DNA of 64,000 bases, taken from assembly GCF_011386835.1 (NCBI RefSeq), contig NC_088801.1, positions 63,116,001-63,180,000 on the forward strand, read 5' to 3'. This DNA is from Chrysemys picta bellii. Lineage: Eukaryota. The notes beneath the pieces were generated by a model. The model was not told where the DNA came from. It saw nothing but the letters and a program-made list of their open reading frames with translations, and ran no database searches. Made by a program: the position numbers and the translations under genes. Of the stretch, positions 44,001-62,419 are shown one piece after another (position 1 is the stretch's first letter; each line of letters begins with the position of its first letter).

Positions 44001-47000
44001 TCTTTTTTAATTACTGCTTAGCCAGCTTTCTACGCTCTTAAAGCATAGGGGTGGATAAGAGAGTAACTGTAACTTAAAAATAACTTTTGTAGTGAGGGCA
44101 AGGGATCTTAAAAGCTCTTGAAAAATATTACTGACAGGCCATCTCTCTTGGGAAAACAAGCCTTGCATTTTCTAATTAATGAAGGACCTTCTCCCTCCAC
44201 GTCTCTCTGCAGAGTTTTCAGATGCTAATGCCAAATTCTATTGCCGGATTTATTATGCCGGGGAATTCCATAAGATGCGTGATGTGATACTCGGGAGCCG
44301 TGAGGAGGACTTCATCCGCTCCCTGTCTCACTCTCTGCCCTGGCAGGCCCGTGGAGGCAAGTCGGGAGCTGCGTTCTATGTGACGGAAGGTAAAACTGGC
44401 TTGCTTATTTCTTCTCCTTTCATAGTGAAAATCTTCTTAACCATTTCTTGTGGGAGGGGTGTTTTCTGTACCTTTAGTGCGGCACTTGCGGGGGGGGGAG
44501 GGTTGGAGAACTAAACTGAAAACCCCAAAGCACAACTGGAGGACTGGCTTTCATAAAGCACACGCTGAAAATGCCAACAGTACCCACTCTTCAGCAGTGC
44601 TGAAAATAGCTGGCCAAGGAGGTTAAGTATAAAACTCCTATTTTCTCACGGCTTCAAGGGATGCCAATTTTTAATATAATTGAATGAGTACAGTTTTCTT
44701 TCAATCTTTCTGGCTTTCACGGTTAAGGCAAACCAGACTTTTTTTTTTAATTCCTTCAAATGAGCCAACACCTAGAACTGTAAAGTCTATGGACACAACT
44801 TTCTGCTGCTAAGGTTTAAAGAGAAAATTACAGTTTATAAGGTACACAGTTGAAGTTAGATTCTTGAAGGGTTGGAGTGGGGGGTGTCTCTATGTATATT
44901 TACAGTAAATGTTGTTTTCCTACATCTAGAATTACATAGCCTTTCTCTAATGTTGAAACAGATGACAGATTCATTTTGAAGCAGATGCCCCGTCTGGAGG
45001 TCCAGTCCTTCCTTGACTTTGCCCCACACTACTTCACTTACATCACTAATGCTGTTCAGCAGAAGGTAGGAGCTTGTATAGCCTGGTGTTTGGAACTTGG
45101 CTTTTATTTAAATAGTTAATTGTTTTCAGGCCAGTCATATTAAAATGAGGGGACTAACAGCAGGGCCAGCTCCAGCGTTTTTGCCGCTCCAAGCGGCGGG
45201 AAAACAAACAAACAAAAAAAGCCGCGATCGGTCGCCATTCCACATCAGCTCTACCACCGCCGCTTCATTCTTCGGTGGCAATTTGGCGGCAGGTCCTTCC
45301 CTCTGAGAGGGACTGAGGGACCTGCTGCTGAGTTGCCGCCGAAGAGCCATACGTGCCGCCCCTTTTCTTTGGCCGCCCCAGGCACCTGCTTGCTGCGCTG
45401 GTGCCTGGAGCCGGCCCTGACTAACAGATATGAAGGGTATAATGGGGAGTTGGGTATATATTGGCAGCCTGATAGAAAGAAAGTATGTGTTTTTAAATTT
45501 AAAATGCAGACATTTCGCCAAGACTTAAAAATCAAATGTATTGGGATGAAAAATGAAAGTTCTTCTTCGAGTGCTTGCTCATATCCATTCCATTAGGTGT
45601 GTGCGCGCCGCGTGTACGATCGTCGGAAGATTTTATACCCTAGCAACACCGGCGGGTCGGCTGTGGAGCCCCCTAGAGTGGCGCCTTCATGGCGCTGAAT
45701 ATATACCCCAGCCGACCCGGCGCCCCCTCAGTTCCTTCTTACCGCCCCTGACGGTCGTTGGAACTGTGGAGCGCTGCTTAGCTGTTCTCCACTCTCCCTA
45801 GCTTAGTTAGTCATTCGCAGTTATAGTTATAGTTGTAGTTCTAGTGTTTATAGTTAAATAGTTAAATAGTTTAAAGTTGTTTTAGTTGTTATTGTAGTTT
45901 AGGGGATTAGGGGGGTCGTCTCCCCCCTTTCTCCCCCGACCGCGGGGCCGGGCTCATGCCCAACGCTCCCGGCTTCAAGCAGTGCGCCTCCTGCGCTAAG
46001 CCTATGCCCACGAGCGACCCGCACGACTCCTGTCTGAAGTGCCTGGGAGAGTCCCATCAAACAGATAAGTGCAAGATCTGTAAGGCCTTCAGACCAAGGA
46101 CCAAGAAGGAGCGGGACTTTCGGCTCCGGCAACTCCTGATGGAGGCGGCACTTAGTCCGGACGCTCCATCTACAAGTCAGGCCCCGGCACCTAGCGCCTC
46201 GGTGCGCAGTGCCCCGGCGGCACCGGCTATGACGACCACGCGAGTGGCGTCGGACAAGCCTCCCCGGCACCGAACCTCGTCGGCACCGCAAGTACAGCAA
46301 GTGCCTCGGCGCCGGTCATTATCCCCGGGGCATAAAAAAGCCCATAAGACGGGGACCTCTGTGCCGAAGACGCCGGCTCCCCCAGTGCCGGGGGTAGAGC
46401 CGCGTCCACCGGTGGAGCACCGGAAACAGGTGCCTCCAGCACCGTCGACTCCGGCACCGAGGCCGTTGAGTCCGGTGCAGATAGCGTCTCCACCGAGACC
46501 GGCGGTGATACAGTGCCTCCCGTCGACTCCAGAGACCTTCGCGGCGGCGAGAGACTTAATAGCTCTCACGGAGCCGGCACCGCCCCAACCACCGGCACCG
46601 ACAGCACCGTTGACTCGCCCGGTCCAGTCGAGGGGGAAACCTGCCTTGATGCGCCCTCCATCGCAAGGGCTGGAACCTCGGCACCGATCCAGGTCCCGAA
46701 GCAGGTCCCCACACCGCTCGCAGTCCCGGCACCGGATATCGTCTCGGCACCGGTCGTACTCGCGGCCAAGATCTTCTTCGCGGCACCGCTCTACGTCTCG
46801 GCACCGCTATGATCGTCGGCACCGATCAACGTCGAGACGTAGTTCTCGGCACCGCTACGGTCGACGCTCGACGTCGAGAGGCCGCTCCCGGCACCGGGCA
46901 TACTCCAGGTCCTCGTCGAGGTCCAGATCCGACTCCCGGCACCGACGAGGTCATCGGCACCGACGAGGTCATCGGCACCGGTCGCGGTCCCGGCACCGAT

Positions 47001-50000
47001 CGCCGGCACCGCGTAGAGATAGATCATCTCCGGACCGGCACCGTGCGGCACCGCAGCCCACAGGAATCGTCTCGACGCTCTCGGCACCGCCGTGGCCATC
47101 GAGATCGGTGTCCCGCTCCTCGGAGGACCTCTCGAGATCGGCATACCCCCCTCAGGGGCAAGCCGAGGAACAGGACTTAGGACATTGGCAGGACACAGAG
47201 GACCATTCTCATGGCCCATCTCACTGGTCGTTTTGGACCCCGTGGGCGTACCATCAGGCGCAAGGGGCTCCAATTGCTTCGACCTCTCGCTCCGGTCACT
47301 CCGTCAGAAGGGCCCCGGAGTCCACCATTTCTCGGCCTCCGCCAGGGGGCATGGAGGCTTCTGTGTCCGCACCACCTGACGCCCTGGACCCAGGCGCAGG
47401 TGATGTTCCAGCCCAGGAACAGGGAGAACAGGACCAGCCCTTGGATCCTGTTCCACCGGAGGCATCTTCCTCTTCTTCTCCGGATGAGGCAGTGGCGGGC
47501 ACATCATGCACAGGCCCACCTCCAATAGATCTTCGGGCTCACCAGGATCTTCTGCGCAGGATGGCCCGTAACATGGACCTGCAGGCGGAGGAGATAGTGG
47601 AGGTGCACGACCCGATCGTGAATATCCTCGGAGCGGATGCCCCATCGAGGGTGGCGTTACCCCTGATCCGCACGATTCAGGCCAATGCTTCTACGATATG
47701 GCAGACTCCTGCCTCTATCCCGCCCACAGCGAGAGGGGTGGAAAGGAAATACTTTGTCCCGTCTAAAGACTACGGGTACTTGTATACCCACCCCCAGCCG
47801 TGTTCACTGGTGGTGGCATCAGTGAACGCAAGGGAGCGCCACGGTCAGCAGGCCGCAGCGCCCAAATCAAAGGAGGCTAAGCGCCTCGATTTATTCGGCC
47901 GTAAAGTTTACTCAGCCGGAGGGCTGCAACTTAGAGTGGCTAATCAACAGGCGCTCTTGAGCCGCTATAGCTTTAACTCCTGGAACTCTATGGGGAAGTT
48001 CAAGGAGTTGGTTCCCCAAGAGTCCAGGGAGGAGTTTGGAGCCCTGGTAGAGGAGGGTAAGAAGGTGGCTCGGACCTCCTTACAGGCCTCCTTAGACATA
48101 GCGGACTCTGCTGCGAGAACCCTGGCCTCAGGTATCGCTATGCGGAGGATCTCCTGGCTCCAGGTTTCGGGTCTGCCTCAGGAACTGCAGCAAACCCTGC
48201 AGGATCTACCCTTCGAAGGTCAAGGGTTGTTTTCTGAAAAGACGGACTCTCGCCTGCAGAGCCTCAAGGACTCCAGGACGATCATGCGTTCCTTGGGGAT
48301 GCATGTTGTGGGCCCTCAGCGCAGGCCATTTAGACCGCAGCCTCAGCGCTTCTACCCCCCCCCCCCCCGCCTCGTCAGAGACAGGACTCGGCCCGGAGGC
48401 GAGGGCGAGGTGGTAGAAGAAGGTGGACCGGCCCTCAACCTGGTCAGAACCAGGGACCACCTAGACCACCTTCAGGCCCTAGGCAGAACTTTTGAAGGTG
48501 CGGTCGAGGACGGCGCCCCAGTCATCCCCCAGGATCCAGCCCCCTCCTTTCGGGATCGCCTCTCCCACTTCCACCGTGTTTGGTGCCTTATAACTTCGGA
48601 CCGTTGGGTCCTTCGCACGGTGGAGAGGGGATACGCTATCCAGTTTTCTTCAATCCCCCCCTCCCACCCCCCTTCCCCGTCCCTCTTCAGGGACCCTTCT
48701 CACGAGCAACTTCTTATACAGGAAGTTTCTACGCTCCTCGCTATGGGGGCCATAGAGGAGGTTCCAGTGGAATTAAGGGGCAGGGGATTCTATTCCCGTT
48801 ACTTCCTCATTCCCAAGTCCAAAGGAGGTCTGCGACCCATCTTGGACTTGCGCGGACTCAACAAATTCGTAGTAAAGTTGAAGTTCCGCATGGTCTCTCT
48901 GGGGGCCATTATCCCTTCCCTCGATCCTGGAGACTGGTTCGCCGCCCTCGACATGAAAGACGCATACCTTCACATTGCTATTTACCCGCCTCACAGACGC
49001 TTCCTGCGATTCGTGGTAAACAGGGTGCACTACCAATTTGCAGTCCTTCCCTTCGGCCTATCCTCGGCCCCACGGGTGTTCACGAAATGTATGGCTGTCG
49101 TGGCAGCGTACCTTCGTCGGCAAGGGATACAGGTGTTCCCGTACCTAGACGACTGGCTGGTACGCGGTCGCACCAAAGAACAAGTTCGAGATCACGTCCA
49201 CATAATAGTGCACACATTCAACAAGTTGGGTATCCTACTCAACAAGGACAAATCCACTCTAGAACCTACCCAGAGAATAGAATTCATCGGCGCGGTTCTA
49301 GACTCCAGACGCGCACAAGCCATCCTGCCAGACAATCGCTTTTGCACCATCACGAGCCTCATTCAAGGACTCAAGGCCTTCCCAACTACCACGGTGAGGT
49401 CGTGCCTTACCCTGCTGGGTCACATGGCTTCCTGCACGTACGTAACCAGGCATGCCAGACTTCGGCTTCGCCCACTCCAGACGTGGGTGTCATCAATATA
49501 CCGCCCACATCGGGACAGCCTGAACATGGTGGTCACAGTCCCGAACTCGGTCCTGACCTCCCTCACATGGTGGCTAGATCACAATGTGGTTTGCGAAGGG
49601 ATGCCGTTTCACGCCCCACAACCCTCTCTGCACCTGGTCACAGACGCTTCATCTCTGGGTTGGGGCGCCCATCTCAACGAGCACCATACCCAGGGCCTGT
49701 GGACTGCACCCCAGCTAGCCCTGCACATCAATGTTCGGGAACTGATGGCGGTGCGCCTGGCGTGCCAGGCATTTCTCAATCTCCTACGTGGTCGCTGTGT
49801 GTTAGTTCTCATCGACAACACCACGGCCATGTTTTACATCAACAAGCAAGGAGGAGCACGTTCGTCAATTCTATGCCAAGAGGCCATTCGCCTGTGGGAC
49901 TTCTGCATCGCCCACTCAATCCTTCTCACGGCATCGTTCCTCCCTGGAGTCCAGAACACTTTAGCGGACCGACTCAGCAGGTCCTTTCAAACACACGAGT

Positions 50001-53000
50001 GGTCTATCCGTCCGGACATCATACATTCCGTTTTCCAGAAGTGGGGGTTTCCCCAGATAGACCTGTTTGCATCTCGAGACAACAGGAAGTGCCACGTGTT
50101 CTGCTCCCTGCAAGGTCGAGCTCCGGGCTCCCTCTCGGATGCGTTTCTCCTTCCCTGGAAAGACCACCTGTTTTATGCCTTCCCTCCGTTTCCTCTGGTC
50201 CACAAGGTACTGCTCAAATTGCGCAGAGACCAGGCACAGGTGATTCTGATCGCCCCAGCGTGGCAGAGACAACATTGGTACACCACGCTGTTGGAACTCT
50301 CGGTTCAGACACCGATCCCGCTTCCATTATGCCCGGATCTCATCTCTCAGGACCACGGTCGCCTGCGTCACCCCGACCTGCAATCACTCCACCTCACGGC
50401 GTGGCTGCTCCATGGTTCACCCAGGCAGAGCAGCAGTGCTCGCACTCTGTCCAACAGATTCTGCTGAGCAGTAGGAAGCCCTCAACACGGACCACATACT
50501 TGGCCAAGTGGAAGCGGTTCTCCTGTTGGTGCGAACAACGAGCCACGTCCCCGTTACAGGCACCTATCCCTCTCATTTTGGAATATCTCCTCTCCCTAAA
50601 ACAGCAAGGGTTGGCGATATCTTCAATTAGAGTTCACCTGGCCGCTATATCGGCCTTTCACCCAGGGGAACTCGCGTCTTCGGTATTCTCTAACCCGATG
50701 GTTGTTAGATTCCTCAAGGGCTTAGACCGGATGTACCCACAGCAACGTCAGCCCGTTCCGACGTGGGACCTCAACCTGGTTCTTTCCAAGCTCACAGGTC
50801 ATCCATTCGAGCCACTGGCCACCTGTTCACTTCTGTACCTATCCTGGAAGACAGCCTTCCTCGTAGCCATCACCTCAGCAAGGCGCGTTTCTGAACTCAG
50901 GGCGCTTACATCCGAGCCCCCTTACACAGTTTTCCATAAGGATAAAGTGCAGCTTCGTCCACATCCTGCCTTTCTCCCTAAGGTGGTTTCTCCTTTTCAT
51001 ATCAACCAGGATATATTTCTCCCGGTCTTTCATCCTAAACCACATGCCACTCGCCAGGATCAACGTTTGCATTCTCTGGACGTACGCAGGGCCCTGGCCT
51101 TCTATATTGACCGCACAAGGCACTTTAGAAAGACGACGCAACTCTTCGTTGCAGTGGCCGACCGAATGAAAGGCTCACCGGTCTCATCACAACGCCTATC
51201 CTCCTGGATTACGTCTTGCATCCGGACTTGCTACGACCTGGCAGGTGTCTCAGCACCGCACCTCACCGCTCACTCCACGAGGGCCCAAGCTTCCTCGACG
51301 GCTTTCCTGGCGCAAGTTCCGATCCAGGACATTTGTAGAGCTGCGGTTTGGTCGTCAGTCCACACGTTTACAGAGCACTATGCACTAGTGCAGCAGTCCA
51401 GGGACGATGCTGCCTTCGGATCAGCGGTTTTGCACACAGCAATGTCTCACTCCGACCCCACCACCTAAGTTGGGCTTGGGAGTCACCTAATGGAATGGAT
51501 ATGAGCAAGCACTCGAAGAAGAAAAGACGGTTACTCACCGTTGTAACTGTTGTTCTTCGAGATGTGTTGCTCATATCCATTCCAAACCCGCCCCCCGTCC
51601 CCACTGTCGGAGTAGCCGGCAAGAAGGAACTGAGGGGGCGCCGGGTCGGCTGGGGTATATATTCAGCGCCATGAAGGCGCCACTCTAGGGGGCTCCACAG
51701 CCGACCCGCCGGTGTTGCTAGGGTAGAAAATCTTCCGACGATCGTGCACGCGGCGCGCGCACACCTAATGGAATGGATATGAGCAACACATCTCGAAGAA
51801 CAACAGTTACAACGGTGAGTAACCGTCTTTTCTGGTGCACAGAAATGTAATGCTTACTACCATAACTATTGGAATGTTATCACTCTGTTCTCTTGATCAG
51901 AAACCAACAGCACTGGCCAAAATACTTGGAGTGTATCGGATTGGATACAAGAACTCTCAGAACAACACTGAGAAAAAGCTGGATCTGCTTGTCATGGAAA
52001 ACCTTTTCTATGGCAGAAAAATGGCTCAGGTGAGGAATAACTATGTGATGCATCGTTCTCTTCCAAAGTGCTTCTTCTGACACAGAGAGCTGCAGCAGGG
52101 CTGCCACTGATACTAATGGGGCATCTTCACCCTAAAGATGTTGACTCAGGCCTTGTCTACACTTATCTGGGGTTTGACGCATGGCGATCGATGCATCGGT
52201 GGTCAGTTTAGTAGGTCTAGTGAAGACTCGCTAAATTGACCGCAGATCTCTCGCCCATCGACTCCCGTACTTCACCTAAACAAGAACCGCAAGGGGAGTC
52301 AACAGGAATGTGTCTCCAGTCAACCACGCGTAGTGTGGACCCCACGGTAAGTAGATCTCAGTACGTCCACTTCAGCTACGTTATTCACATAGCTGAAGTT
52401 GTGTAACTTGGATCGATCTCCCGCAGTAATATAGACAAGGCATAAAAGTGTCATCTTCAAATGGCTTCTATTGCTATAGTTAAGATTGCAACCTTTTTTC
52501 CATTAGATGTCCTAATGTGCTACTCTGAAACCTATATTTGTCCTTCCATCTCTGGGTATCCAGGGTGGCTTGCCCTGAACTGCAAGGTTTACACTGAAGA
52601 CTCAGAATTTTTTTTTTAATGTTAGAAGAAAATTAGCCAAAATCACACACAACTTAAAATTTGACTTTGTCTTTTTAGATCAAAAAAGGCTTATTGCTGA
52701 CCGTCTATCCTTACCAGGTGGTTAAATCTTGACCCTATGCCTAAACTACTATTTGAAGAAATGTGGTGGTGGTGGTTTAAGCATATTATAGTGTCTGCTG
52801 TATCTAATTCTAATGGTTTTAATGTATATGTGATCTGCTTGTCCTATGGTGGTTTGCTGCCTCAGAGACATTATATATTTGAGCTTAACTTCTTGCTAGA
52901 CTGGTGGAGCACAGCTGTTTGGTAGCTGAAGGGACCAGGTTTCTAGGCCAGATCAACAGGTTTGTATGGCCTATCTTGTACTGTGTTTGCAGCAACCACA

Positions 53001-58235: not shown

Positions 58236-61106
58236 GCTAAAGCACACGTTGTGGTGGGCGGGGAAGCACAGTGAAAGAGAACATTTCCTGATAGAAGAGG
58301 ACACAAACACCCTGGACTTTACGTTGCCGTTCAAGCTCCCTGCAGTAGGCAAAAGGATTGCAAACCTGCGTCTGCACAGGCCACATGCATCTGAAATGTA
58401 AAATCTGCATCTTGCCTGCACTTCAGTTCCTGACCTGAGAGATTACAGATATAGCTGGCAGATGCAAGCTATTGTAGGGATCAGAGTTGGAACATATTAC
58501 TCAGAAGATTGAGAATGGGGTGATTTATTAGCTCAGCCACAGAAAAGAGGACAGCATCCAATACAGATTTTTGTACACTGTCCCACATATCAGAGCACTG
58601 AAACCTGGTGCTGGCCAGTTTATGATGGAACACTTTGGAGAGAAATAAGTGAGCTCTGCAAGTATTACACAACTTGTACAGTGGCTAATGTAAGTTTGAA
58701 TCTGTAGAGCAGATGTGTGTGATTTGCATCAGTGTCTAGTGTGATAGTGCAAGAGACGTAGAAAGCTTTGAAATAAGCACCCTGGTCCTGGAAAATCTAA
58801 GTCAATTCATATCCACAATGTTCAGTACTGCTGCAGTGGTCTGAAGCAGACCTTGTAAGAATCAGAGTGAAGAACTTGTCCTGTTATGCACTTTACAAGT
58901 TCCGTTCTTACAGGCTTCTGTAAACAATATTTGTGTGTGTTGTAGCCAGGTATGACCATTACATTGTCCTTTTATTTGTACTGAACTTTTATGCAGCTAA
59001 GTTCATTGCAGTAAGTGCAATTTGCCCTGCCTGTCATAAATTAGTTTTCAGCAGCCTCACACAGAAATGGAGCAGTCGAACACTGAAAACAATAGGAACG
59101 TGAACCAGACATTCCCAAAGCCCCAGAAGCAAACTAATTAAACTACAGATCTCTCTTATCCCTTTCAAGAGAGACTTCTGTGCAAGAAGCACTGCCTTGT
59201 CTTGCATGATTCATCATGCTGCCTTAATGGTAGCTTCTTTTTTAATGATACTAACGTCCTTTGAAGATAAATTCCAGTCATTTCATTTCATTCCCACAAA
59301 ACTTTAACTATCACATTCCTTCAAAGTAAAAAGTCTTGCCAGCACAATATTTTTCTTACGTTCTTAAGATAAGATTCCACATCCAGACCTCAGTGACATT
59401 TCATACATATAAACCAGATTTGAAAACTCTTCTAAACAACATTTGCTTCTGCAGCATTGAAATGAATGTTCAGTTGTCTTGGTGCTCTGTGTGGAAACGG
59501 AATTAGTAGGTGTTTTTGGTATGATGTGCAGGGATCTGTGGATCGCCACAACTTGAAAATAAGCACTTCTTTCATTTTTATTCATTTTACTTATTTTTTT
59601 TGGTAGACGTGCCAAGAGTTTACTTATTTTAGCTTCAATACAATAAAGGCCAGTAAAATGAGGGTATTGTATGTATGTTAGAGGCAAGTTCCATTGTCCT
59701 TGGGACTTACCTTGTAGGACATAGGCAACAGGCAAAATTAAACGTGACGTCTGAGACGGCACAAGTCTTCAGGGCCATTATCTGCTATGATGGGTTGTCA
59801 CTAATACTAGCTTCAATGCAGTAACTGAGTCTTAACTATGCATTTCCCTCTACCCAACATTTCTCTTTCTAGGGTTATGGTAATTCATATACCCAAGCAT
59901 GGGGGTTAGAGAGGGTGGATAGGGCAATTAAAAAATTTCAGCAGTGGTGACCTGATCCAGGTTGTTCATATAAAAATGCAGCTTGGTGTTGAGCTGCTGT
60001 TAAGTGACGCTGCTGTAGCATTCATGTCCTGTCAAGCAAAAAACTCCATTCGATTCTTACATTTGGTTGATCCTACTATAGAAAGAGGAAGGAGAGGAGT
60101 CTAACTTGGGTTTAAGCTGGAGAAGTCCCATTCGCTTTGTACAGCGTGATTGTTAGTGTTTCTGAATCCGTTAATCATCAACTAGTTTGCGGTTGCAGTG
60201 CACGCCAAGGATGGCTGAAGGTGACAATACTGCATGTCTCCCTACAGCAGAATCCCATAAATCCAGTGAGTCAAGCACTGATGCCTGAGGTGCAGCTGTT
60301 GCATGTTTATGCATTTTTTTTACCTCTAATGTTCTAACTTACATCAGAGTCATGCTGACCCGGATATATCTGGCTTTCAGTGGGGTTGTGCTTTTTGCCC
60401 AGTTTGACAATTAAGTTGGCTTTGTACAAGGTCAAGTGACTTACCCAGTATCATGGAATTACTGCTTTTAACTAAGAATGCAACTCAACCATGTATTCAT
60501 TCCTATTGTATGTAGATTTTTCTAGCTCTAGGAGGAAGCATCACTACACATCTTCCCCAAAAGAAAGAGCCCATGTTACGGACTTATATGGCTGCCCGAG
60601 GTCTATATTACAAGTTTTCACCTTTTATTTCACTCTTCTCCAGCTTCCCCAGAAAAGCTAATTTATACACTCTTCTCTAACCCACGCTGACAGCTCAATT
60701 GACACACTGTCAAGTGGATTTTATCAGCTGTGTGTTAGGAGTAACAGACCAAATCTGAACATGGGTAACATTCAGGTTTCTGCTCTCTGCTATAGTCCTT
60801 CCACTCCATAACATCCTCATTTTGATACAAAGAATAGTTACTCTGTAGAGTGATGTATGGTTTTTTCCCTTTGCTGCTACTTAAGCTGATGGTTATTAGT
60901 AACTCTGCTAACCATGGTTCTGATGTAACATAGTCAGTACTCCCCATCATTGGGATCAACAGACAGACTTTCAGCACTGCATGAAAAGAGACCGATGTAG
61001 ACCTGCCTTTTTTTTTTTTTTTTTTTTTTTTTATTATTAAGTGTGTCCTTTGGCCAGCTGATTTGCAGTACTACTACTTGAAACCTGAAAATGTCCCTTG
61101 AATTCA

Positions 61107-61193
61107 GGGCCAGATCCTCTGCGGCTACAAACTGGCATAGTTCTTCCGAGGTCAATGGAGTTATGCCAATTGACATCAGCTCAGGATCTCTCC
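61107..61193. mobile_element. Short palindromic MITE-like relic in the probable 3' UTR
   Basis: GGGCCAGATCCT...GGCATAG / TTATGCC...AGGATCT inverted arms. Confidence 0.55.
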
Positions 61194-62231
61194 TGTGATG
61201 GTGGTGGTTGCACTCAGGCAGTAAATTACTTGTCCTGGTCTGACTGAGGCTGATAACAAACAGTGTTGGCCTGGAAAATAAAGGGGCACCGATATTCACT
61301 GTGATCTGGAAGGTTTTGCAGATTTGAAGTACTTGATGATCTTATTCAACTGGGGCAAAGCTCAAGAGACAACACTTACTGAAAGGCGCCGCAGCACATA
61401 TATATTGTGCAAAAGGAAGGACGTGTCAGCGACAGTAATGGAATTGGCAGCTCCTTACGGGTGTTCTCCATTAGGATAAGAACTATCCTAGCATTTCACC
61501 TGCTACAAAACTGAGTTCCTCCAAAAGAAAGCAACAAGCAGTATTTTTGCGCACAAAAGACAGCGTTTCACATCTGGAAACTCCTGTCAGGGCTAAAACG
61601 AGGCCGGTGAGATGCTGGTGTCTGACTGTAGCTGAGCTAGATCAGGATCCCTGAAGTATTAATGCAGGGGACTATAACTCGCAGTATTATGGCTCTGGTT
61701 AGTGCAATGTTTTCTCTTAATTTTGTAACACGGGTGTATGTACATAGAGTAAATAATCAACTACAATTGCAATCATGAAGCAGCACTTTATCAGATGCTG
61801 CATTAGCTGTTGTATAAATCTAGGAGTTTAGGCAAATGTGTTAATCTTGTCTAATTCAAGAAGTGACAACTCATTTTTGTGTTACAGTATCTGTATAGCA
61901 CAACTTCTTTTAATTGCTTGGGACTTGAATTCTGCCACCCTTATTCACACGCAGTATCACCTTGCTATATAAGTAGCCCCATATGAGACCAGTGGAGCTA
62001 CGTGCATAGTAAGATGCTCCTCAGTGTGTCTAAAAGCATGGCAGAATGAGACCCTTAGTTACCAGAGATGAGATGAGCCACATTCAGAAGCACTCAATGT
62101 ACCATAATATGTATATATTTCTATTGTACCTTGGTTCCAGCTGTGTTTTATATGACTCTGACATGTTAAACTATTTAAAAGTAACTGCCTTGACTACTTG
62201 GAAAACTGAATTGTATGTAGATAGCAGTCCC

Positions 62232-62237
62232 AATAAA
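62232..62237 (+). terminator. Candidate distal polyadenylation signal AATAAA (alternatives at 59642-59647 and 62310-62315)
   Basis: Canonical hexamer followed about 20-45 nt later by ctctttacattctttacgtgtgttt. Confidence 0.45.
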
Positions 62238-62419
62238 GTAATTAAAATATACTTGCTACTCTTTACATTCTTTACGTGTGTTTGACAAGAATCTCATCAA
62301 ATTATAGCCAATAAACGTTGCGTGTCTACAGAGGCATTGGCATGATTTAGGCAGGATGGCTGAAAAACTTTTTTCCCCCCACCCCTCCCAGCCAATAATT
62401 GGGTTAGTCCCTAAACCCA

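What the first reader, a model, noticed from the sequence alone, without database searches (positions are those of the whole stretch)
48481..48500. One TTT-TGA may act as a three-way translational switch for Gag, Gag-Pol and Gag-recombinase
Seen: the native Gag frame ends AAC TTT TGA (TGA 48493-48495). The Pol frame is +1 to it (TTT at 48491, then GAA GGT GCG) and has no ATG until LLAMG, inside RT, so a ribosome decoding UUU could re-pair on the overlapping UUU at the stop. The recombinase ORF is in the same frame as the Gag tail and is open from the very next codon (48496) to 51468. Established: +1 shifts at slow-decoding stops are known (bacterial RF2 CUU-UGA, antizyme UCC-UGA). Inference: termination, +1 shift or read-through at this one codon could set the stoichiometry of all three DIRS products. 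I know of no description of this mechanism for vertebrate DIRS elements, but I cannot search.
Basis: partly seen in the sequence, partly recalled or inferred. Interest (0 to 1): 0.85.

Follow-up and report, generated by a model that had tools for sequence, protein, structure and literature searches.

The report
Conserved frameshift-prone stop ending DIRS Gag
The TTT-TGA is the conserved end of the Gag gene of a turtle DIRS retrotransposon and sits in a motif known to make ribosomes slip +1 into the polymerase gene, while the same frame stays stop-free for about 990 codons to the recombinase; this particular copy, however, carries an upstream frameshift that bypasses the site.

Summary
The sequence facts are correct. 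TTT TGA lies at 48490-48495, Pol is +1 to it, and the TGA frame is open from 48496 to 51468.

In this copy the Gag body (45956-48354) is not in the TGA frame. A 14-C run, 5 nt longer than in relatives whose Gag is in one frame, fuses Gag to Pol as one 1503-aa ORF.

More than 15 turtle Gag proteins end in the same basic tail. Between two copies the tail shows 9 synonymous and 2 non-synonymous codon changes in that frame, against 0 and 10 in the Pol frame.

Across 11 loci the Gag stop is always UGA inside a recognised +1 slippery motif:
- UUU UGA in eight turtle loci
- GUU UGA C in Pelodiscus
- CUU UGA C in Pogona (identical to RF2)
- UCC UGA U in a catfish (identical to antizyme)

Pol is always +1 and has no conserved AUG. 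The Gag/recombinase frame across Pol has 0-5 stops, where 17-18 are expected.

A +1 frameshift to Gag-Pol is well supported by comparison. Read-through to the recombinase is plausible but unproven. No experiment exists for either.

The parts
45575..45744 (.). Left inverted terminal repeat of the DIRS-type element
   Evidence: 170-nt arm, 98% complementary to 51617-51786 (I1).
45956..48354 (+). Gag body (frame mod3=2): N-terminal Cys/His motif, Ser/Arg-rich repeats, LAP2alpha-like domain
   Evidence: ORF listing and translation. Substitutions against copy L001 fall on third positions of this frame. Weak PF11560 LAP2alpha hit. Turtle Gag homologues found.
48355..48368 (+). Run of 14 C: the point where this copy's Gag body leaves the frame of its own tail and joins the Pol frame
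   Evidence: The alignment with L002, L003 and L005 (Gag and tail in one frame) shows the window 5 nt longer here. L001 is 1 nt shorter and is also fused. A 5-nt-shorter form is seen in public contigs (table 4).
48370..48495 (+). Basic Arg/Gly/Gln-rich Gag tail in frame mod3=1, ending ..QNF-TGA
   Evidence: Against L001: 9 synonymous and 2 non-synonymous codon differences in this frame, 0 and 10 in the Pol frame. The same tail ends divergent turtle Gag proteins.
48490..48495 (+). TTT TGA: Gag stop codon and candidate +1 frameshift site (UUU re-pairs on the overlapping UUU at 48491-48493)
   Evidence: Identical hexamer in 8 turtle loci. GTT TGA C in Pelodiscus, CTT TGA C in Pogona, TCC TGA T in catfish. 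These motifs are listed as +1 slippery sequences in PMC3500957.
48494..50467 (+). Pol (reverse transcriptase / RNase H / methyltransferase-like region), +1 to the Gag tail
   Evidence: PF00078 RVT_1, E 3.5e-20. Aligns with DIRS Pol proteins of fish and lizard. Third-position substitution pattern.
48496..50394 (+). About 635 stop-free codons in the Gag/recombinase frame, overlapping all of Pol
   Evidence: 0 stops against 17.4 +/- 3.4 in synonymous-codon shuffles. 0 of 104 at-risk dicodons have T at the preceding third position. 0-5 stops in the same frame in 9 other loci, against 19-43 in the third frame. No amino-acid-level constraint.
50395..51468 (+). Tyrosine recombinase: SAM-like N-terminal domain plus catalytic domain
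   Evidence: Sub-threshold PF00589, PF02899 and PF13495 hits. 41-98% identity to the same region in 10 loci. Third-position substitution pattern of this frame. No conserved Met before it.
51484..51584 (.). Internal complementary region
   Evidence: 40-nt and 65-nt perfect inverted matches to the element's outer ends (I2 and I3).
51617..51786 (.). Right inverted terminal repeat
   Evidence: I1.

Best explanation
The window holds a young DIRS1-like tyrosine-recombinase retrotransposon of a turtle.

**Family architecture.** Gag ends at a UGA that directly follows a shift-prone codon (UUU in most turtles). Pol has no start codon of its own and lies in the +1 frame. Most ribosomes terminate and give Gag. 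A fraction slip +1 while the stop codon waits in the A site: the P-site tRNA moves from UUU to the overlapping UUU and GAA is read next. This gives Gag-Pol. It is the logic of bacterial RF2, antizyme and yeast Ty1/Ty3.

**Route to the recombinase.** The Gag frame beyond the UGA is kept free of stops by selection all the way to the recombinase domain, which also lacks its own start. Ribosomes therefore very probably reach the recombinase in that frame. Read-through of the same UGA is the simplest route, but it is unproven.

**This copy.** A C-run 5 nt longer than in in-frame relatives has put the Gag body into the Pol frame. This copy encodes a direct Gag-Pol fusion that lacks the Gag tail, and its TTT-TGA is not met in frame.

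**Shown:** the anatomy, its conservation and the selection signatures. **Inferred:** the frameshift and the read-through themselves.
For: 1. Gag tail frame.
   - More than 15 divergent turtle Gag proteins end in the same basic tail..(K/R)Q(N/A/E)F or ..KPGF.
   - Window against L001 in the tail: 9 synonymous and 2 non-synonymous changes in the TGA frame, 0 and 10 in the Pol frame.
   - The family-majority letters at 48456 and 48480 are synonymous only in the TGA frame (table 3).
2. Site conservation, with Pol identity to the window falling to 39%.
   - TTT TGA in the window, L001-L005, L007 and L008.
   - GTT TGA C in L009, CTT TGA C in L006, TCC TGA T in L011.
   - The stop is always TGA and Pol is always +1.
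3. Pol cannot start on its own.
   - In the eight loci whose Gag is not fused to Pol (L002-L005, L007-L009, L011), the Pol frame is closed 2-109 codons upstream of the motif. In L008 it is closed only 2 codons upstream.
   - That short stretch holds no ATG, except one in L009.
   - The first downstream ATG is not conserved.
4. UUU UGA, CUU UGA C and UCC UGA are listed as +1 slippery motifs in PMC3500957.
5. Stop-free Gag/recombinase frame over Pol.
   - 0 stops in the window, L002, L003, L004 and L011; 1-5 in decayed copies. The third frame has 19-43.
   - Shuffles expect 17.4 +/- 3.4 and 17.8 +/- 3.4.
6. The intact-looking catfish element L011 has exactly one stop (the Gag TGA) in that frame between 60837 and 65397.
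7. There is no conserved Met before the recombinase domain and no conserved X_XXY_YYZ heptamer in the Pol frame.
8. The window's frame break is located by alignment with in-frame relatives.
Against: - No experiment, ribosome profiling or peptide evidence exists. All runs laid were contigs, so RNA ends, splicing and expression level could not be judged.
- No conserved RNA structure lies 3' of the stop. The consensus fold is -3.7 kcal/mol and single-sequence z-scores run from -1.3 to +2.0.
- The base after UGA varies (A, U, C). Only L008 has the read-through-favouring CUA.
- Part of the TTTTGA conservation could come from dual coding (Gag F-stop over Pol-frame F-D/E) rather than from the slip itself.
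- The loci descend from a common ancestor, so they are not independent inventions. Most are decayed copies.
- The overlapped frame shows no amino-acid constraint. A read-through product would therefore carry about 635 residues of unconstrained sequence.
- One blenny copy (L010) has no stop at the Gag junction at all.
- Piednoel et al. report that about half of DIRS1-like elements lack the long overlap. The recombinase can therefore be made in other ways.
Confidence: 0.65

Rival explanations
1. One reading: one stop codon with three fates. At NUU-UGA the ribosome terminates (Gag), slips +1 (Gag-Pol) or reads through (Gag-linker-recombinase). This single site then sets the ratio of all three products.
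For: - All the evidence for the +1 site applies.
- Gag and the recombinase share one frame in every locus once each copy's frameshifts are tracked. The one exception is the Pogona copy L006, whose frames cannot be reconciled.
- That frame is stop-free under selection from the codon after the UGA.
- Only one stop separates Gag from the recombinase in the intact-looking catfish element.
- There is no conserved AUG and no -1 slippery heptamer that would offer another entry.
Against: - No read-through context or 3' pseudoknot-like structure is conserved.
- The overlapped 635 codons evolve without amino-acid constraint.
- About half of DIRS1-like elements lack the long overlap (PMC3266345).
- There is no direct evidence of a read-through product.
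Confidence: 0.3
2. No recoding. Pol and the recombinase are translated from spliced or subgenomic RNAs, by reinitiation or from internal non-AUG starts. TTTTGA is then conserved only because two overlapping reading frames constrain it.
For: - Dual coding does constrain the hexamer: Gag F-stop over Pol-frame F-D/E.
- No stimulatory RNA structure was found.
- The contigs laid cannot exclude splicing.
Against: - The 0-frame codon before UGA changes (UUU, GUU, CUU, UCC) while it remains a recognised shift-prone codon.
- The Pol frame is closed 2 codons upstream of the motif in L008, so entry must occur at the motif.
- No conserved AUG exists in either downstream frame.
- No joint stood out as RNA-specific among the joints listed (table 5).
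- This model leaves the selected 635-688-codon stop-free frame unexplained.
Confidence: 0.12
3. In this family Gag-Pol arises from length changes of the upstream C-run (slippage by RNA polymerase or reverse transcriptase). Fused copies like the window's would then be the working form, and the TTT-TGA only ends an alternative tailed Gag.
For: - Two copies, the window (+5 nt) and L001 (-1 nt), each carry a C-run indel that fuses Gag to Pol.
- A 5-nt-shorter form makes up about a fifth of the depth at this place in two runs guessed to be RNA, but far less in the two large runs X1 and X9, taken to be genomic DNA (table 4).
Against: - The C-run is absent from other families that keep the same stop motif and frame plan: L003, L005, L008, L009, L006 and L011.
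- L001 and the Pogona model were found by a search that selected long fused proteins, so their fused state is a sampling bias.
- The tail is under purifying selection in its own frame.
Confidence: 0.05

Closest known systems
Bacterial release factor 2 (prfB) programmed +1 frameshift, CUU UGA C
   Same: A shift-prone P-site codon ending in UU sits directly before an in-frame UGA. The tRNA re-pairs on the overlapping UUU. The Pogona DIRS site is the identical heptamer. The motif is listed in PMC3500957.
   Different: RF2 uses an upstream Shine-Dalgarno-like stimulator and is autoregulated by RF2 level (established knowledge). Neither applies in a vertebrate cell. Here the product is a retroelement Gag-Pol.
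Antizyme (OAZ) +1 frameshift, UCC UGA U
   Same: A eukaryotic +1 shift at a UGA stop. The catfish DIRS Gag ends in the identical UCC UGA U.
   Different: Antizyme shifting is polyamine-sensed and helped by a 3' pseudoknot (established knowledge). No conserved 3' structure was found here.
Yeast Ty1 / Ty3 Gag-Pol +1 frameshifting
   Same: Retroelements that set the Gag:Gag-Pol ratio by a +1 slip at a slowly decoded A-site codon, without a large RNA structure.
   Different: Their slow codon is a rare sense codon (AGG, AGU), not a stop. They are LTR elements with a DDE integrase (established knowledge).
Murine leukaemia virus-type gag-stop-pol read-through
   Same: A single in-frame stop separates Gag from a downstream enzyme in the same frame.
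   Different: MuLV needs a 3' pseudoknot, and the downstream protein is conserved from the stop onward. Here no such structure was found, and the first ~635 codons are unconstrained and overlap Pol.
'Long ORF overlap' of DIRS1-like elements (Piednoel et al. 2011, PMC3266345; Goodwin and Poulter 2001, not readable here)
   Same: The anatomy is the same: the recombinase ORF overlaps pol extensively and its catalytic part lies in the non-overlapping 3' end. It is reported in about half of 28 elements, including Anolis and Xenopus ones.
   Different: In the text I could read, that description gives no expression mechanism. It does not mention the shift-prone Gag stop or that the recombinase ORF continues the Gag frame.

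Membership tests
DIRS1-like tyrosine-recombinase retrotransposon | Inverted terminal repeats plus an internal complementary region matching the outer ends | tested here: met
   ITR arms 45575-45744 and 51617-51786 are 98% complementary. The ICR at 51484-51584 has 40-nt and 65-nt perfect inverted matches.
DIRS1-like tyrosine-recombinase retrotransposon | Gag-like ORF1 related to the LAP2alpha domain | tested here: met
   Homologues carry PF11560. The window's own hit is weak, E 0.017. The DIRS origin of LAP2alpha is described in PMC4495291.
DIRS1-like tyrosine-recombinase retrotransposon | Pol with reverse transcriptase / RNase H (and a methyltransferase-like region), no protease or DDE integrase | tested here: met
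   RVT_1, E 3.5e-20, is the only Pfam family on the 1503-aa ORF. Relatives carry PF17917 RT_RNaseH. The methyltransferase region was not tested on its own.
DIRS1-like tyrosine-recombinase retrotransposon | Tyrosine recombinase encoded at the 3' end | tested here: inconclusive
   The Phage_integrase and SAM-like domain hits fall below Pfam's cut-off, E 8e-4 to 2e-3. The region is 41-98% identical to the same region in 10 related loci.
Programmed +1 ribosomal frameshift at a stop codon (RF2 / antizyme type) | Shift-prone P-site codon directly followed by an in-frame stop, with the downstream ORF in +1 | tested here: met
   UUU, GUU, CUU or UCC followed by UGA in 11 loci, with Pol always +1.
Programmed +1 ribosomal frameshift at a stop codon (RF2 / antizyme type) | Downstream ORF lacks its own initiation codon and its frame is closed shortly upstream | tested here: met
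   The Pol frame is open only 2-109 codons upstream in unfused copies. No ATG lies there (one exception), and there is no conserved downstream ATG.
Programmed +1 ribosomal frameshift at a stop codon (RF2 / antizyme type) | Stimulatory element (upstream rRNA-pairing site or 3' pseudoknot) | tested here: not met
   No conserved or unusually stable 3' structure. Upstream elements were not examined. Ty1-type sites need none.
Programmed +1 ribosomal frameshift at a stop codon (RF2 / antizyme type) | Trans-frame protein product detected | not testable with these tools
   No reads, ribosome profiling or proteomics were available. The runs laid were contigs only.
Programmed stop-codon read-through (MuLV / tobamovirus type) | In-frame ORF continues after a single stop and is maintained by selection | tested here: met
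   990 open codons follow the TGA in the window. The catfish Gag-to-recombinase frame has one stop. Stop avoidance is far beyond shuffles.
Programmed stop-codon read-through (MuLV / tobamovirus type) | Read-through-promoting 3' context or structure | tested here: not met
   The bases after UGA vary (AGG, AGC, UGG, CUA, CUC, CUU, UGC). Only L008 has CUA. No conserved structure.
Programmed stop-codon read-through (MuLV / tobamovirus type) | Protein-level conservation beginning right after the stop | tested here: not met
   Substitutions across 48496-50467 follow the Pol frame only.

The most novel reading that the evidence does not exclude
In vertebrate DIRS1-like retrotransposons a single UGA has three programmed fates. 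Termination gives Gag. A +1 slip on the preceding UUU/CUU/GUU/UCC gives Gag-Pol. Read-through gives Gag joined to the recombinase through about 635-690 residues of sequence-unconstrained linker that is overprinted on the whole of Pol. The stop-free overlap is then kept only so that ribosomes can pass. The arrangement dates back at least to the common ancestor of teleosts and reptiles.
Probability: 0.3. Interest if true: 0.85.

Novelty: new variant of a known kind. Interest (0 to 1): 0.72.

Why it matters
- **An open question in DIRS biology.** How these elements express Pol and the recombinase from overlapping ORFs, without a protease or obvious start codons, is not explained in the literature I could search.
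- **A specific, testable site.** The comparison gives a hexamer or heptamer identical to the RF2 and antizyme shift sites, conserved from catfish to turtles and a lizard. That would add a vertebrate retroelement class to the short list of eukaryotic +1 frameshift users.
- **The 'long ORF overlap' recast.** It becomes one Gag-recombinase frame interrupted by a single UGA. Selection acts on the absence of stops, not on the encoded protein, which is unusual.
- **Annotation.** Many automatic gene models bridge these frames with false introns or pick frameshifted fused copies.

Tried and rejected
- **-1 frameshift from Pol into the recombinase frame.** No conserved X_XXY_YYZ heptamer in the Pol frame in any of 8 loci.
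- **Own start codons.** No conserved ATG in the Pol or recombinase frame after the stop, and none before the recombinase domain.
- **3' stimulatory RNA structure.** The consensus fold is weak. Single-sequence z-scores run from -1.3 to +2.0.
- **Amino-acid selection on the overlapped frame.** Not seen between the window and L001.
- **C-run slippage as the general mechanism.** The run is absent from other families.
- **Splicing.**
  - No joint stood out as RNA-specific among the joints listed. The only joints listed in the two runs guessed to be RNA also occur in the DNA runs (table 5).
  - All runs were contigs, their RNA status is a guess, and 94 further joints were not shown. This is therefore not evidence of absence.
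- **Copy census at the C-run.** Contigs often end at the run (table 8), so the share of fused and unfused copies could not be estimated.
- **Earlier notes of this scan.** Nothing on this place or on DIRS frameshifting.
- **Literature.** No paper in the library links DIRS to frameshifting or read-through. Goodwin and Poulter 2001 is not held, so prior mention there cannot be excluded.
- **P0136 look-up.** It returned no locus.
Full report
**1. What is in the window.**
The finding lies inside one complete DIRS-type element.
- Its inverted terminal repeats are 45575-45744 and 51617-51786, 98% complementary.
- An internal complementary region at 51484-51584 matches the outer ends.
- No second copy lies in the window.
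- The best protein match is a Chrysemys picta model at 93% identity. All close relatives are turtle sequences.
- Pfam finds RVT_1 on the long ORF. It gives sub-threshold integrase and SAM-like hits on the 3' ORF.

**2. The observation.**
- AAC TTT TGA is at 48487-48495.
- The +1 frame reads TTT GAA GGT GCG from 48491.
- The TGA frame is open for 990 codons, from 48496 to 51468.

Upstream, the TGA frame is open for only 53 codons, with a TAG at 48331. The Gag body, which starts at ATG 45956, is in the Pol frame. Gag and Pol therefore form one 1503-aa ORF, 45956-50467.

**3. Which frame is the real Gag end.**
A second full copy (L001, 94% identical) allowed a codon-position test.
- In Gag and Pol, differences pile up on third positions of the Pol frame. 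In the recombinase-only part they pile up on third positions of the other frame.
- In 48370-48495, 9 of 11 differences are third positions of the TGA frame. This gives 9 synonymous and 2 non-synonymous codon changes in that frame, against 0 and 10 in the Pol frame.

Independently, more than 15 Gag proteins of divergent turtle families end in the same basic tail..GP(K/R)QNF..KPGF or ..KQAF. These come from Chrysemys, Macrochelys, Pangshura, Gopherus, Chelonia and unnamed public assemblies.

Alignment with relatives whose Gag runs into the tail in one frame (L002, L003, L005) locates the break. It lies in the window's C-run 48355-48368, which is 5 nt longer than the matching stretch. L001 is 1 nt shorter there, and both copies are thereby fused to Pol. 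L001 and the Pogona model were found by a search that favoured long fused proteins, so their fused state is a sampling bias.

A form 5 nt shorter appears in public contigs. It is rare in the two large runs X1 and X9, taken here to be genomic DNA. It makes up about a fifth of the depth at that place in two runs guessed to be RNA. Contigs often end at the C-run, so I draw no census from this.

**4. The stop site in relatives.**
I fetched ten related loci. Their Pol identity to the window ranges from 97% down to 39%.

| Loci | Codon before stop, stop, next base |
|---|---|
| Window, L001-L005, L007, L008 (turtles) | TTT TGA |
| L009 (Pelodiscus) | GTT TGA C |
| L006 (Pogona) | CTT TGA C |
| L011 (catfish Tachysurus) | TCC TGA T |

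- The codons flanking the motif vary, but the stop is always TGA and Pol is always +1.
- In the reptiles the +1 codon is always UUU, although the Gag-frame residue changes (F, V, L). That is the pattern expected if re-pairing of the P-site tRNA is what is conserved.
- CUU UGA C is the RF2 site and UCC UGA U is the antizyme site (established knowledge). Both, with UUU UGA, are listed as +1 slippery motifs in PMC3500957.
- In unfused copies the Pol frame is closed 2-109 codons upstream of the motif. It is only 2 codons in L008, which pins the point of entry.
- That stretch has no ATG, with one exception. The first ATG downstream is not conserved.

**5. The recombinase frame.**
- In every locus the recombinase frame equals the Gag frame once each copy's own frameshifts are tracked. 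The one exception is the degraded Pogona copy L006, whose frames cannot be reconciled.
- Over the ~530-690 Pol codons that frame has few stops:

| Locus | window | L002 | L003 | L004 | L005 | L006 | L007 | L008 | L009 | L010 | L011 |
|---|---|---|---|---|---|---|---|---|---|---|---|
| Stops in Gag/recombinase frame | 0 | 0 | 0 | 0 | 3 | 1 | 5 | 3 | 3 | 1 | 0 |

- That is about as few as in the decayed Pol frames themselves. The third frame has 19-43 stops.
- Synonymous-codon shuffles of Pol expect 17.4 +/- 3.4 stops in the window (minimum 7 of 2000). For the catfish they expect 17.8 +/- 3.4.
- In the window none of 104 at-risk dicodons has T at the preceding third position.
- The alternative frames of Gag are full of stops.
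- The intact-looking catfish element has a single stop, the Gag TGA, in this frame between 60837 and 65397.
- The overlapped frame shows no amino-acid constraint. No Met is conserved ahead of the recombinase domain. No -1 slippery heptamer is conserved in Pol.
- The long pol/recombinase overlap is itself known (PMC3266345).

**6. What was not found.**
- No conserved RNA structure follows the stop.
- There is no consistent read-through context.
- No joint stood out as RNA-specific among those listed. The data are contigs whose RNA status is a guess.
- One decayed blenny copy has no stop at the junction.

**7. Interpretation.**
- A programmed +1 frameshift at the Gag UGA, giving Gag-Pol, is the best-supported mechanism. 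I put this arm at about 0.75 on its own, and at 0.65 for the whole statement, including the account of this copy.
- That ribosomes traverse the overlapped frame to make the recombinase is strongly suggested by the selected absence of stops. Read-through of the same UGA is the simplest way in, but it lacks its usual signals. I give the full three-way model about 0.3.
- In the window's own copy the site is out of the translated frame because of the upstream C-run.

**8. Novelty.**
Shift-prone stops and DIRS ORF overlaps are both known. I found no description that links them. Goodwin and Poulter 2001 could not be read.

Noticed in passing
window 46673-47016: The Ser/Arg-rich middle of Gag is built from imperfect direct repeats with spacings that are multiples of 18 nt (..TCGGCACCG.. 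units). L001 differs here by an 18-nt indel.
   Followed up: partly
window 45956-46060: The Gag N-terminus carries a Cys/His motif (C-x2-C ... H-x2-C-x2-C-x-G-x2-H) that is conserved with fish DIRS Gag proteins (consensus D-x-H-x2-C-V-x-C-L-G). It may bind zinc or nucleic acid.
   Followed up: no
L010 (Salarias fasciatus) 4541-6944: In this decayed blenny DIRS copy the Gag frame runs into the Pol-overlapping frame with no stop at the junction. The public gene model bridges the Gag and Pol frames with a false intron (about 5500-5850).
   Followed up: partly
L011 (Tachysurus vachellii) 60861-65399: An apparently intact catfish DIRS element. Gag ORF is 60861-62327, the Pol frame is open 62206-64392, and the recombinase frame is open 62328-65399. 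The annotated gene model joins it to exons 56 kb upstream.
   Followed up: partly
L001 about 5064-5066 (matching window 48424-48426): Copy L001 has a TGG-to-TGA change inside the Gag tail frame. It also has frameshifts in the Gag N-terminal half and a 7-nt deletion in the recombinase region.
   Followed up: yes
proteins P0002, P0004, P0008, P0035, P0036, P0088, P0116, P0166, P0177: Many turtle host-gene models contain DIRS Gag or Pol segments. Examples are a calcium channel, complement receptor, NEDD4 and nitric oxide synthase. These may be annotation artefacts or exonised element fragments.
   Followed up: no
window 48579 and 48585: The window copy has private non-synonymous letters at the start of Pol (Val and Cys). 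Nearly all contig depth in the public runs, and L001/L002, have Ala and Ser or close to it there (table 3).
   Followed up: partly
window 48355 (table 4): The 5-nt-shorter C-run form is about 20% of the depth in two runs guessed to be RNA. It is under 0.2% in X1 and X9, the two large runs taken to be DNA. This could mean that a few in-frame copies dominate expression, or it could be a contig artefact.
   Followed up: no
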